A stretch of 62,851 nucleotides of DNA from Macrostomum lignano (lineage: Eukaryota): contig NIVC01000560.1 in assembly GCA_002269645.1 (NCBI GenBank), positions 1-62,851 of the forward strand, read 5' to 3'. A program made the position numbers and the translations under genes. Below, piece by piece: positions 57,501 to 62,851 of this stretch. The notes under the pieces are model-generated. The model had not been told where the DNA came from, did not search any database, and saw only the letters and a program-made list of their open reading frames with translations. The first letter of the stretch is position 1. Each line of letters opens with the position of its first letter.

Positions 57501-60500
57501 AAAAAAGTAACTCGTAAGGCTGCGAATCGAGCTATGCACAAGGTGACATTAGGCCCATCAATCACTTGCACAACACTGGATGTAGTCGATCAAAACATGC
57601 GAACCCTGCGATCTGAAATAATAGTTGATGCATCAAAAGACGGCCGACATCGCTTGACAGAGAAAGGCTTCTGTCTTGAAGCTGAGCTGCCTCAGTGCGA
57701 GCTTGGCAAAGCGTACGACCTCGGCGAACAATTTAGATTCCTAAGAATGCCCAGACTAGCAGTTGTCGAAGCTACAAGATCGGATAACGAACCTAAAGAA
57801 GACATAGTAGAGGTCAAAGAAGAAGCGGCACTACCAAACATTGTAATCGTCGAACCACCAGTGCTGAGCCCGGTGGCCGCGGCATCTTGCTCAAAAGAAG
57901 ATCTACGCGAGCAGCTATTGACAGTTCACTCGGACGATGTCCGTCGCCACCTTATGGAGTTTGATATCTCGGAGCTTTTGGCTACTGTTTTGCGGCTTGT
58001 TGAGCTCACAGATGAAGAACGTTCTAACATATGGGACATAGTGCGTTTTCCTGGAAGCGACACATTCGGTAAGGAATACATGGCGGACGTCTTACTGAGG
58101 AAGATCAACCACGATCTAGCCAAACCTGCCCGAGAACCGAGTAACTCGCTAAATGATTCGGCAATCAGCTCTGCTCGCCAGCAGAGACCCCTTCAGACAG
58201 CTATTGTGGGAGGACCTCCTCCAGAAGGTGTTCTAGACACCTATGATCTAAACATCGGCACTCCGCCCCAGCCAACTTACACTTCGCGTCATTTGGGTGC
58301 CCTACGCCAGCAGCTGTATGAGTTGCGCGACTTTGCCCTGATGGCTGAGGAGCCCCACCGGACACTGATCTCCAAAATATGTTGAAAATTTAGTTCAGAT
58401 GACACGACTCGCTTTGGAAGCTGGACTGCAGCCAAACAGCGAACTACCAGAGCACCTCACCGCAGCAGAGGCATTTTTAGAGGCCGAAAAGGCTGCACCA
58501 GAGGGCGCTGTTGGCGGTGGTACTGACCCGCTTGTTGGTACTCTGACAGAGTTGGCGGTGAGCCTTCACGACTCCGTTGCAAATCAAGTAATTGAACTGG
58601 ACGAACGACTTGGTATCGATGTGGCGCAAATTCTACGGGAACTGCGCGTCTGCTTAGAAGCCTGCGAGACACCAGACGGTGAAGTTGCAGTTAACAATGC
58701 AGTTCTTGATTTGAGCCGTCGTTTAGCCATCCTCTCAAAGAAAGATCACTCCAATCAGATTAGCCTGTCGCCATTAAACAACCACTGCCTGGACCGCCTC
58801 TGCAGCGCCGTCGGGCATAACTGCTTAGATCCAGTAAGCTTCCTAACCAGTGTTATCGAGATTTTGGAGGAGGCTAAACGTGTGCGAATTTCTCGGCTAA
58901 TGCAGAGGTCTAATCAGCGTATTTCTGACATCCTGTTAGAATTGTTCAAGCTTCACAGCCCTAATCGAGACTATCTCTTCCTGCCTCGCAACGAGGTCCG
59001 CAAGTTGCACTACGCGCTACATTTTCGCATCGACATGCCAACGCGGAAGCTTGAGGCATTCCGTGCTCGTGTTGAGCAGCTGGCTGAGAAGGACAAGTGT
59101 GCTAAAGTGTCTACTGAAATGGTTAGCGAACTGAAGGAATATGTCGCTTCAGCGCGACCTCCTAGTGTGGCAGACGTCGCGGAATTGTCGTTTAAAGACC
59201 GGTACTTTCTGCAGCAGCTTGAAGTTCTTCTCAGAGAGAGAGGATGCGAAATATATACGACGCCAATGACACCCACGGAGGACGATATGCGAAATTTTTC
59301 GAAACTAAAAACGATTGTAGAGGCCGTGAAGAACAAAGTTCCCGGGCCATACGATCACACAATCTTGAGCTCTACTCTAGAGGCTCTTCAAATGGTGATG
59401 AGCCGAGCGGAAGATGATCGCTACATTGATATGGCAGAGAGTGATGCCATTTTAAGAGGCGTTGCTATGTTGAATCGGGTTCAGATCGATGACATTACAA
59501 TCAATGAGAGGTCAGTAAAGCTAGCTATAGCCTCAACGCAAAGCCTACTCGCCGCTAGAAATATTGGCGATAGCGAAAAAATGGTACTGCACGAGTGCTG
59601 CGACTATCTTAGAAGGGCCACTGCAAGCATGAACTTAGCCATTTCAGTTCAGAGCAAACTCAAGCAGCAATTGCGGCGTGCACGGCGCAACGAATTTAGT
59701 AACAGAACTGACAACCAGACTCTTTCACATATGCTCGAACAGGTCATTAACAGGAAACGCTCTTTCCGTGACCCAGTCGACCGAAGAACAACGATGTATG
59801 ACAAGGCCATGAAAGCCATTACTAATATCCAAGAAATGCTGGCAAATGACCTAAAGCCAAGTAAGAGTCTCAGCGGAAAAGACTCAAATCGCCTTTCTAA
59901 GAATTTTAATTCCTTATTTAAATCACTTCGTGAGTCACCTACAGATCTTGGCCTTACTGGCCTAGAAACCGTACGGGCACTAACAGTGATGAAAGGCCTT
60001 CAACAGAAAGAGAAGGGGGCCAGGTTTTCTAAAGAGGAAATCAGCTCACTTGCTAAAATAGCAGATATAATTCACGACAACGTTCACGACACTCAAAATG
60101 CTGAGCTAAGCATTTGGCTACTCGGAGAACTGCAGTTCATTAACAGGTTCATTGCAATGAGGGATTACAGTCGATTAGCAAAATTGTCTCAGTGCATTGT
60201 GACGCTTGTCGAAAGCGACAAGAAGCGCGACAACAGTGATCTACAAGGCATTTTGGCTAATCTAAAAGGCTGTATGGCCGAAGGCAGGTTCAGCAACTTT
60301 ACGTTGACTGAACTAAAATTGTTGCGCCAATTTCTGGAAAGAAAAGCACGAGCTGCTCCTCTTGAAAAGAGCGCTGCAGAAAAGGCTGGGTTAGATGAAA
60401 ATACACGTGATACAATCAAAGATGGTGCTGAACTTCTTCAAAAACAGCCTAGTAAAAACGCGAAACTATCTGCAGAAGACGAAAAGGAACTCAGTGACGC

Positions 60501-62851: not shown

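What the first reader, a model, noticed from the sequence alone, without database searches (positions are those of the whole stretch)
59836..62851. Unrecognised 313-aa alpha-helical tandem repeat: one ancient edge copy plus homogenised internal copies
Seen: 939-bp copies start at 60793, 61732 and 62671 and are almost identical (one synonymous change noticed). A clearly homologous but heavily diverged copy, about 319 aa with more AT-rich codons, precedes them: [29 protein letters not shown] vs [29 protein letters not shown], and [13 protein letters not shown] vs [13 protein letters not shown]. Composition changes sharply near 60790. The unit has no Cys, Phe or Tyr, one Trp and a KKKKK patch. 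It contains about 9 sub-motifs of the type L-[ST]-x-E-E-x-x-x-L ([45 protein letters not shown]). Inference: these are helix-capping motifs of a helical solenoid, and the array is undergoing concerted evolution that spares the edge copy.
Basis: partly seen in the sequence, partly recalled or inferred. Interest (0 to 1): 0.75.

Follow-up and report, generated by a model that had tools for sequence, protein, structure and literature searches.

The report
Repeated helical tail of flatworm kinesin
The near-identical 313-amino-acid repeats are real: they begin a long array (at least 8 copies) of a previously undescribed all-helical module in what is very probably the giant tail of a kinesin-3 motor gene of the flatworm Macrostomum lignano, kept uniform by an ordinary, well-known process (concerted evolution).

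Summary
Copies of 939 bp start at 60793, 61732 and 62671 and differ at one synonymous site. A 319-aa edge copy (59836-60792) is 32% identical to them (E=1e-29). GC3 jumps from 0.32-0.41 to 0.68-0.76 at about 60790.

The window is Macrostomum lignano. In the public Mlig_3_7 assembly the same locus carries at least 7.7 copies before the contig ends. Another contig starts inside a 924-bp variant of the array (about 7 copies) and then encodes a unique 658-aa C-terminus.

The unit matches no Pfam family, PDB sequence or PDB fold. Among 1.84 billion representative proteins only two relatives exist. One is from a second, unknown organism whose copies are also identical to each other but only 39-46% identical to the M. 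lignano unit. That pattern indicates concerted evolution, and GC-biased gene conversion is the likely cause of the composition jump.

Upstream exons on the same strand encode a kinesin-3 motor and an FHA domain. An RNA-seq-based gene model and in-phase canonical splice sites join them to the giant exon.

AlphaFold gives 13 helices, 12 of them starting right after an S/T/D/N cap. A solenoid is not shown. The function is inferred to be a spacer or scaffold in the tail.

The parts
21470..21542 (+). First kinesin motor exon ([25 protein letters not shown]), with ATG at 21470 and a GTGAGT donor directly after it
22004..36532 (+). Further kinesin-3 motor exons, separated by minisatellite-rich introns. 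They lie at about 22004-22120, 23184-23294 (P-loop [13 protein letters not shown]), 24158-24190, 24817-24996, 27740-27808 (SSRSH), 27888-27953 (HLVDLAG), 31222-31308 and 36434-36532.
   Evidence: Pfam Kinesin E=6e-62. Best PDB sequence hits are KIF13B 2.7e-70, KIF1A 2e-65 and KIF14 3e-59.
38121..38186 (+). Neck coiled-coil exon ([22 protein letters not shown])
   Evidence: Read from the sequence.
45249..46442 (+). Two exons encoding an FHA domain (about 45249-45347 and 46308-46442), with a 20-bp minisatellite between them
   Evidence: Pfam FHA 26.6 bits (cutoff 20.7), E=8.4e-6; coordinates
49061..51108 (+). Long low-complexity/coiled-coil exon. Its apparent stop codon TGA lies inside a consensus donor G|GTGAGT at 51108/51109.
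51109..55996 (+). Inferred intron (GTGAGT ... TTTTATGTCCTCAG) whose removal joins the two long ORFs in phase
   Evidence: Consistent with the 2505-aa Kinesin+FHA gene model of Mlig_3_7 that ends inside the giant ORF.
55997..59835 (+). Unique 5' part of the giant tail exon: a Q/S/P-rich, apparently disordered stretch followed by a helical stretch. No copy of the unit is detectable here.
58352..58388 (+). Apparent frame break. The window lacks two bases present in Mlig_3_7 (C5 vs C4; AACAA vs AAAA), where the ORF is continuous. Most likely an assembly indel pair.
59836..60792 (+). Diverged 5' edge copy of the unit (319 aa, GC3 0.32-0.41)
   Evidence: 32% identity, E=1e-29; alignments; GC3
60793..61731 (+). 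Homogenised copy 1 (939 bp, 313 aa). Identity to the next copy begins abruptly at about 60790.
61606..61650 (+). Lys-rich linker ([15 protein letters not shown]) with low pLDDT. It is the probable boundary between structural modules. The same patch occurs in every copy and in the edge copy.
61732..62670 (+). Homogenised copy 2, with one synonymous difference from copy 1 (61122 T vs C)
62671..62851 (+). Homogenised copy 3, cut by the end of the window. The array continues in the other assembly.

Best explanation
The finding is the 5' end of a long tandem array of a lineage-restricted, all-alpha, acidic 313-aa module. The array lies in the giant last coding exon of a Macrostomum lignano gene. 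The array and its evolution are shown; the link to a kinesin is strongly indicated; the function is inferred.

Gene context. The N-terminus of the gene is a kinesin-3-type motor followed by an FHA domain.

Evolution.
- The array is kept uniform by unequal crossing-over and gene conversion (concerted evolution).
- The 5'-most copy has a unique upstream flank. It therefore cannot pair out of register, has escaped homogenisation, and has drifted to 32% identity.
- Repeated conversion has probably also driven GC3 up to about 0.72 through GC-biased gene conversion. That would shift the protein towards Ala/Gly/Arg and away from Phe/Tyr/Ile/Asn.

Structure. Each module runs from one Lys patch to the next. 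It is predicted to fold into about 13 helices, whose starts are set by hydrophobic-[S/T/D/N]-x-x-[E/D/Q] capping boxes. It appears to be built from degenerate helix-loop sub-repeats of about 26-28 aa.

Function (inferred only). The array is a long beads-on-a-string extension of the motor's tail. It would act as a spacer or a multivalent scaffold, with helical modules of net charge about -23 alternating with basic linkers.
For: Array and its reality:
- Searches show the copies in the window.
- An independent PacBio assembly has at least 7.7 copies of the 939-bp type at the same locus (L003, 99.3% identical to window 53760-62851).
- Contig NIVC01000762.1 starts inside a 924-bp variant (about 7 copies) and continues into a unique 658-aa C-terminus.

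Organism.

Concerted evolution:
- Within M. lignano the copies differ by about 0.1% or less in substitutions.
- P0002, from an environmental contig, has a period of 915 nt with 117/117 identical overlap, yet is only 46%/39% identical to the M. lignano unit and 32%/27% to the edge copy.
- Terminal repeats escaping homogenisation is the expected behaviour (PMC3495898).

gBGC signature: GC3 0.32-0.41 in the edge copy against 0.68-0.76 in the array, with a parallel amino-acid shift.

Orphan status: only 2 hits in 1.84e9 representative proteins. Nothing in Pfam, PDB sequences, PDB folds, GTDB genomes or JGI metagenomes.

Structure:
- Helix starts follow cap residues.
- 22 of 62 invariant columns are Leu.
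- Off-diagonal self-similarity scores 32.0 at a shift of 28 aa, against 11.8 +/- 2.1 in shuffles.

Kinesin link:
- Motor and FHA exons lie upstream on the same strand.
- The Mlig_3_7 model is a 2505-aa product with Kinesin+Microtub_bd+FHA that ends inside the giant ORF. That annotation is built from RNA-seq transcripts (PMC5730564).
- A canonical donor at 51108/9 and acceptor at 55996/7 join the ORFs in phase.
Against: - No read-level data were available. Polishing of long-read assemblies can make near-identical copies look more identical than they are, and the true copy number is unknown because both public contigs break inside the array.
- It is not shown that contig 762 continues contig 561. 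The 15-nt difference between all their copies may mean two separately homogenised duplicates, since M. lignano is a neopolyploid with a redundant assembly.
- The kinesin link rests on an annotation table and on splice logic. I never saw the 2505-aa sequence itself.
- The window has an apparent frame break at 58352-58388.
- The structure models rest on only 2-3 sequences.
- Nothing tests the proposed function.
- GC enrichment could also come from selection on codon usage or from the ancestry of the expanded copy.
- P0002's source organism is unknown. It is labelled as a Kangiellaceae MAG, which I regard as a mis-binned 1-kb contig.
Confidence: 0.75

Rival explanations
1. The identical copies are an assembly artefact: a single unit, or a few units, was duplicated by the assembler.
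For: The window ends inside the array, and both Mlig_3_7 contigs break inside it. Such arrays are hard to assemble.
Against: - Two different assemblies agree on tandem copies at the same junction with the edge copy.
- A second contig carries a distinct 924-bp variant in tandem.
- Copy 1 carries a private synonymous SNP.
- An unrelated environmental contig also shows a tandem junction.
- Transcript-based gene models lie inside the array.
Confidence: 0.03
2. The repeat ORF is a separate gene, and the annotation merely fused it to the neighbouring kinesin gene. The repeats would then be an orphan protein without a motor.
For: - M. lignano has many polycistronic precursor transcripts.
- There is an ATG at 56001, just after the proposed acceptor.
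- I could not retrieve the 2505-aa product itself.
Against: - The annotated CDS is one continuous product with Kinesin, FHA and an end inside the giant ORF.
- The upstream exon's only 'stop' lies inside a GTGAGT donor.
- The best acceptor, CCTCAG|A, restores the frame exactly.
- The length budget (about 694 + 683 + 1121 aa) fits 2505 aa.
Confidence: 0.17
3. The identity reflects one very recent burst of duplication, not ongoing homogenisation.
For: Near-zero divergence is what a recent burst would give, and the array is seen in only one well-sampled species.
Against: - A second organism has its own, equally uniform array of a 39-46% diverged unit. Arrays therefore existed before the split and have been turned over independently.
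- The strongly raised GC3 needs time and many conversion events.
- Two unit variants (939 and 924 bp) are each spread over 6 or more copies.

In practice repeated bursts and losses by unequal exchange are concerted evolution.
Confidence: 0.1
4. The unit is a degenerate member of a known fold: EF-hand pairs, a HEAT/ARM/TPR-type solenoid, or a spectrin/vinculin-type bundle.
For: - Both AF2 models show two-residue beta bridges just before four helices, as in EF-hand pairs.
- G-D-L-T-x-E-E resembles the second half of an EF-hand loop.
- There is a weak periodicity of about 28 aa.
- The top Foldseek hits, though not significant, are vinculin, alpha-catenin M domain, BRIC repeat proteins and spectrin.
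Against: - There is no EF-hand, HEAT, ARM, TPR or spectrin hit in Pfam even at E<=1.
- The best Foldseek E-values are 0.56 and 0.93, with TM at most 0.27 over the unit.
- The loops lack the acidic calcium ligands (positions 1/3/5 are S/G/D or N/K/G, and position 12 is Q).
- Helix lengths are very uneven.
Confidence: 0.12

Closest known systems
Kinesin-3 family motors (KIF13B, KIF1A, KIF14)
   Same: An N-terminal motor domain with its best sequence matches to KIF13B/KIF1A, then a neck coil and an FHA domain.
   Different: None of the known tail domains (PH, PX, CAP-Gly, MBS) was found. Instead there is a tail of several thousand residues carrying at least 8 copies of an orphan 313-aa helical module. 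If the two contigs belong together the protein would be about 6000-8000 aa, several times longer than the described kinesin-3s that I know of (own knowledge).
Leishmania K39-type kinesin-related proteins (tandem 39-aa repeats in the tail; e.g. PMC6921591, PMC10975607, seen)
   Same: A kinesin whose tail carries a long, highly uniform tandem repeat array that differs between species.
   Different: The unit there is 39 aa, not a 313-aa multi-helix module. The lineage is unrelated (kinetoplastids) and there is no sequence similarity. I did not compare the kinesin subfamilies.
Large uniform coding arrays in single giant exons: filaggrin (324-aa units flanked by imperfect edge units), epiplakin (nearly identical plakin-repeat units), AHNAK (own knowledge, not tested here)
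   Same: Units of about 300 aa, many near-identical copies in one exon, imperfect or diverged edge units, and species-specific homogenisation.
   Different: The sequences and folds are unrelated. Those are vertebrate epidermal or cytolinker proteins, whereas this array is attached to a motor domain.
Brachionus mate recognition protein mmr-b (PMC3495898)
   Same: A coding tandem array under concerted evolution in which the terminal repeat is not identical to the full repeats. The paper's explanation is that unequal crossing-over at the array end is inhibited by dissimilar flanks.
   Different: The units are much shorter, the product is a secreted glycoprotein, and the edge copy is far less diverged than here (32% identity).
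Pfam DUF5053 (PF16476)
   Same: A helix-loop-'LTxEE'-helix stretch gives weak matches: 22.2 bits for one unit and 14.6 bits for the edge copy, at different sub-repeats.
   Different: Every unit scores below the 26.6-bit cutoff. The 32.6 bits for P0001 are a sum of sub-threshold repeats with no single passing stretch. It is a motif resemblance, not membership.

Membership tests
Kinesin-3 family | Kinesin motor domain with the closest similarity to kinesin-3 members | tested here: met
   Pfam Kinesin E=6e-62. The top PDB sequence hits are KIF13B, KIF1A and KIF14. P-loop, SSRSH and DLAG motifs are present.
Kinesin-3 family | FHA domain C-terminal to the neck coil | tested here: met
   Pfam FHA 26.6 bits, above the 20.7 cutoff, on exons at 45249-46442, downstream of the neck-coil exon at 38121-38186.
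Kinesin-3 family | The repeat array is part of the same polypeptide as the motor | tested here: inconclusive
   A transcript-based 2505-aa model with Kinesin+FHA ends inside the giant ORF, and canonical splice sites join in phase. However, the product sequence was not retrievable, no cDNA was seen, and the window has a 2-base frame break.
Concertedly evolving coding tandem array | Copies within a genome are far more alike than copies between species | tested here: met
   About 100% identity within M. lignano and 117/117 nt within P0002, against 39-46% amino-acid identity between the two.
Concertedly evolving coding tandem array | Edge copy escapes homogenisation | tested here: met
   The 5' edge copy is 32% identical, with a sharp switch at about 60790. 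At the 3' end the array simply stops mid-unit, with no detectable diverged remainder.
Concertedly evolving coding tandem array | Copy-number variation between individuals or haplotypes | not testable with these tools
   No reads or population data. Both public contigs break inside the array.
GC-biased gene conversion tract | GC3 is raised specifically in the recombining copies relative to the flanks and to the non-converted paralogue | tested here: met
   GC3 0.68-0.76 against 0.32-0.41 in the edge copy and 0.39-0.58 over most of the rest of the exon, with one Q/S-rich window at 0.71. This is compatible with gBGC but does not prove it.
Alpha-solenoid repeats (HEAT/ARM/TPR-like) | A regular repeat of 2-3 helices of constant length, recognisable by profile or fold | tested here: not met
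   No Pfam hit at E<=1 and no Foldseek hit. Helices span 4-41 residues. Only a weak 28-aa self-similarity is present.
EF-hand | A 12-residue loop with acidic ligands at positions 1, 3, 5 and 12, and a profile or fold match | tested here: not met
   The loops read [12 protein letters not shown] and [12 protein letters not shown] (sequence). There is no EF-hand hit in Pfam, and none among the 50 best PDB fold matches listed for either model.
Pfam DUF5053 | A domain score above the gathering cutoff (26.6 bits) | tested here: not met
   22.2 bits for the unit and 14.6 bits for the edge copy. P0001 reaches 32.6 bits only as a sum, with 0 passing stretches.

The most novel reading that the evidence does not exclude
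This would be a motor protein of a kind not described before. It would be a kinesin-3 of roughly 6000-8000 residues whose tail is a string of 15 or more copies of a 313-aa helical module with a new fold, confined to macrostomid flatworms and rapidly remodelled by unequal exchange. Tail length would then be a fast-evolving, possibly polymorphic trait of a motor.
Probability: 0.35. Interest if true: 0.55.

Novelty: new member of a known kind. Interest (0 to 1): 0.36.

Why it matters
The evolutionary behaviour is textbook: a uniform array, a diverged edge copy and raised GC. That part is a clean example rather than a discovery.

Two things are new. The module itself has no family, no solved relative and only two relatives in 1.84 billion proteins. 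Its probable context is the tail of a kinesin-3 motor.

If confirmed, this would be an unusually large kinesin with a tail whose length can change by whole 313-aa steps. That would give a natural system for asking how tail length and valency affect a motor. Macrostomum lignano has transgenesis methods (PMC5730564).

The locus is also a practical warning. The gene is split into at least three gene models on two contigs in the public annotation, because both contigs break inside the array and assembly frameshifts cut the reading frame within it.

Tried and rejected
- Word-index protein searches were uninformative. They returned nothing or only a 169-aa fragment, and missed P0001 and P0002 although both are in the collection. 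I treat their negatives as carrying no weight.
- Exact-product look-ups for the two long upstream ORFs found nothing on record.
- Pattern scans of the JGI metagenome contigs and the GTDB genomes found no relatives. A bacterial origin for P0002, despite its 'Kangiellaceae MAG' label, is therefore unlikely.
- The search for older, more degenerate copies upstream of the edge copy or downstream of the array end found nothing significant. I used BLASTP, hmmsearch --max, hhalign and Smith-Waterman with shuffles.
- TRF cannot see the array, because the period exceeds 500.
- Rfam found nothing in the window.
- The EF-hand idea, prompted by beta bridges in the models, was rejected for lack of ligands and of any profile or fold hit.
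- The solenoid idea was not supported.
- The DUF5053 hit was rejected as sub-threshold motif similarity.
- dN/dS between the unit, the edge copy and P0002 was not attempted, because synonymous sites are saturated at 32-46% amino-acid identity.
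Full report

Yes.

- One reading frame is open from 58369 to the last base of the window.
- In that frame, 939-bp units start at 60793, 61732 and 62671.
- Units 1 and 2 differ at a single base, 61122 (GCT against GCC, both Ala). The 181 nt of unit 3 that fit in the window are identical to unit 2.
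- The preceding 319 codons (59836-60792) align end to end with the unit at 32% identity and 54% positives, E=1e-29.
- Read in register, identity between position i and i+939 is random-like up to about 60753, is somewhat higher through the last codons of the edge copy, and becomes 100% from about 60790.
- GC3 is 0.41, 0.37 and 0.32 in the three 300-nt windows of the edge copy, and 0.68-0.76 in every window of the uniform copies.
- The unit has no Cys, Phe or Tyr, one Trp, 16.6% Ala and 23% Asp+Glu.
- The strict motif [LV][ST]x[ED][EDQ] occurs 5 times against 0.33 expected (0 of 5000 shuffles). A looser form occurs 10 times against 3.8.

**2. Where the window comes from, and how long the array is**

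An exhaustive HMMER scan of 1.84 billion representative proteins with a profile of the unit plus the edge copy found only two proteins.

P0001 (1320 aa) lies on contig NIVC01000762.1 of GCA_002269645.1. This is the Mlig_3_7 assembly of the free-living flatworm Macrostomum lignano.

- That contig begins inside the array. After a partial unit, seven unit starts follow with a period of about 924 bp.
- The units are identical to the window's except for a 15-nt deletion (AEKAA) and single-base indels typical of PacBio consensus errors.
- The array stops mid-unit (after ...[11 protein letters not shown]) and runs into a unique 658-aa, S/P/T/R-rich C-terminus.

A fragment model, P0003, led to contig NIVC01000561.1.

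- The first 16.5 kb of that contig, reversed, match window 53760-62851 at 99.3% and then continue.
- Eight unit starts of the 939-bp type follow, that is at least 7.7 copies, until the contig ends.

The array is therefore not an artefact of one assembly, and the window shows only its first 2.2 units.

Whether contig 762 continues contig 561 (at least 15 units) or is a duplicate locus cannot be decided. Mlig_3_7 is known to be redundant, and all units of one contig differ from all units of the other by the same 15 nt.

**3. Concerted evolution**

The second hit, P0002, is a 343-aa product that fills a 1032-bp environmental contig (JGI 3300040801). In NCBI it is labelled as part of a Kangiellaceae MAG.

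- It is itself a tandem. Its first and last 117 nt are identical, giving a period of 915 nt (305 aa).
- Its unit is 46%/39% identical to the M. lignano unit but only 32%/27% identical to the M. lignano edge copy.
- No relative exists in 185,579 prokaryotic species genomes. I therefore read the contig as mis-binned DNA from another small marine animal, probably a related flatworm. That last step is inference.

So two organisms each have internally uniform arrays of units that are strongly diverged between them. The internal unit is also closer to the foreign unit than to its own neighbour at the array edge. This is the signature of homogenisation by unequal exchange and gene conversion.

Escape of the terminal unit is the expected consequence of its unique flank (PMC3495898).

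At the 3' end there is no diverged remainder that I could detect.

**4. The composition jump**

The uniform copies are richer in Ala, Gly, Arg and Pro (30.0% against 20.4% in the edge copy). They are poorer in Phe, Tyr, Met, Ile, Asn and Lys (15.8% against 27.9%). This parallels the GC3 jump.

The simplest reading is GC-biased gene conversion acting on the copies that recombine. This is an inference. It predicts the same contrast in other species.

It also means that 'no Phe/Tyr' is at least partly a mutational by-product.

**5. What the unit is**

Known families and folds:
- No Pfam family reaches its cutoff. The best is DUF5053 at 22.2 bits against 26.6, and it hits different sub-repeats in the unit and in the edge copy.
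- No PDB sequence matches.

AlphaFold2 models:
- Rotated to start after the Lys patch (window 61621-62559, three-sequence alignment), it gave pLDDT 82.8 and pTM 0.61, with 100 residues at or above 90. The structural module therefore probably runs from Lys patch to Lys patch, with [15 protein letters not shown] as a flexible linker.
- Both models have 13 helices. In 12 of them the residue just before the helix is S, T, D or N, preceded by a hydrophobic residue.
- Foldseek against the PDB gave nothing better than E=0.56 and 0.93. The top, non-significant hits are generic helical bundles: vinculin, alpha-catenin M domain, designed BRIC repeats and spectrin.

Conservation and internal repeats:
- Of the 62 columns invariant among the unit, the edge copy and P0002, 22 are Leu. 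The motifs SWLAxD, LG[LV][ST], AL[TN]V[LM], PLxxSxAEKAGLD and the Lys patch are conserved. This fits a folded helical domain under selection.
- A profile self-comparison gives an off-diagonal alignment at a shift of 28 residues with score 32.0, against 11.8 +/- 2.1 (maximum 20.8) in 60 column shuffles.
- Cap motifs are spaced 21-42 residues apart. The 313-aa unit thus looks like a higher-order repeat of about 11-12 degenerate helix-loop sub-repeats.

A regular solenoid is not demonstrated. An EF-hand relationship, suggested by two-residue beta bridges before four helices, is not supported by ligands, profiles or folds.

**6. Gene context**

Upstream on the same strand are the following features.

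| Feature | Window coordinates | Evidence |
|---|---|---|
| Kinesin motor exons (ATG at 21470; P-loop, SSRSH and DLAG motifs) | 21470-36532 | Pfam Kinesin 6e-62; best PDB hits KIF13B, KIF1A, KIF14 |
| Neck coil | 38121-38186 | |
| FHA domain | 45249-46442 | 26.6 bits against a 20.7 cutoff |
| Coiled-coil exon | 48558-48719 | |
| 683-codon exon | 49061-51108 | |

- The 'stop' of the 683-codon exon lies inside a G|GTGAGT donor.
- The acceptor TTTTATGTCCTCAG|A at 55996/55997 restores the frame of the giant ORF exactly.
- In Mlig_3_7 one gene model gives a 2505-aa product with Kinesin, Microtub_bd and FHA hits and ends inside the giant ORF, where an assembly frameshift cuts it.
- That annotation was built from RNA-seq transcript assemblies (PMC5730564).
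- The window's own break between the two long ORFs (58352-58388) is two missing bases relative to Mlig_3_7, where the ORF is continuous.

I therefore consider it likely (about 0.8) that the repeats are the distal tail of a kinesin-3 motor. I did not see the 2505-aa sequence or any cDNA.

**7. How it probably works**

Shown:
- the array, its uniformity and the diverged 5' edge;
- its presence in two assemblies and in a second organism;
- its orphan status;
- the helical prediction with cap-defined helix starts.

Strongly indicated:
- concerted evolution;
- the link to the kinesin.

Inferred:
- gBGC as the cause of the composition jump;
- a beads-on-a-string tail of acidic helical modules (net charge about -23 each) joined by basic linkers, acting as a long spacer or a multivalent scaffold for cargo or for the microtubule surface.

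No data here bear on the cell type or the cargo.

**8. Novelty and verdict**

The evolutionary phenomenon is well known. I know the filaggrin, epiplakin and AHNAK arrays from my own knowledge. The Brachionus MRP case is in PMC3495898, and kinesin tails with uniform repeats exist in Leishmania.

The module itself and its attachment to a kinesin-3 motor are new as far as these libraries show.

I file it as a new member of a known kind and rate its interest as moderate to low (0.36). There is an upside if the giant kinesin is confirmed.

No step in this work needed to be referred.

Noticed in passing
window 21-1008 (+): A protein-kinase ORF is split over two overlapping frames. 21-983 carries Pkinase profile positions 4-164 and 505-1008 carries positions 164-258. 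This is either a frameshifted pseudogene or another assembly indel.
   Followed up: partly
window 8776-9324 (-): An exon-sized ORF with a serine beta-lactamase-like domain (Pfam Beta-lactamase 2.3e-18) lies on the opposite strand, flanked by 55- and 59-bp minisatellites.
   Followed up: partly
window 26767-47401 and 51135-51836: The introns of the kinesin gene are packed with long minisatellites. Examples are a 13-bp unit x222 (27993-30879), 42 bp x103 (31372-35718), 32 bp x45 (36657-38083), 25 bp x40 (41098-42114), 20 bp x42 (43728-44572), 20 bp x40 (45401-46187) and CAGAA-type x70 (51135-51836). They give long spurious ORFs on both strands.
   Followed up: no
window 16001-22000: An AT-rich island (GC 0.30-0.32 against 0.40-0.55 elsewhere) lies just upstream of and around the first kinesin exon.
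   Followed up: no
window 58352-58388 vs L003 6850-6890: The window lacks two bases that Mlig_3_7 has (a C in a C-run, and a C in AACAA). This breaks an ORF that is otherwise continuous. Conversely, Mlig_3_7 has many 1-nt indels inside the repeat units that the window does not have.
   Followed up: yes
L001 (NIVC01000762.1 1-6670) vs L003 (NIVC01000561.1) and window 61660-61674: Every unit on contig 762 lacks the same 15 nt (AEKAA) that every unit on contig 561 and in the window has. These are either two homogenised blocks of one array or two separately homogenised duplicates.
   Followed up: partly
L002 (JGI 3300040801 contig, 1032 bp): The only non-M. lignano relative is deposited as a hypothetical protein of a Kangiellaceae MAG. 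It is most likely a mis-binned eukaryotic contig.
   Followed up: partly
tool behaviour: The word-index homology search missed proteins that share hundreds of identical residues with the query and are in its collection.
   Followed up: no
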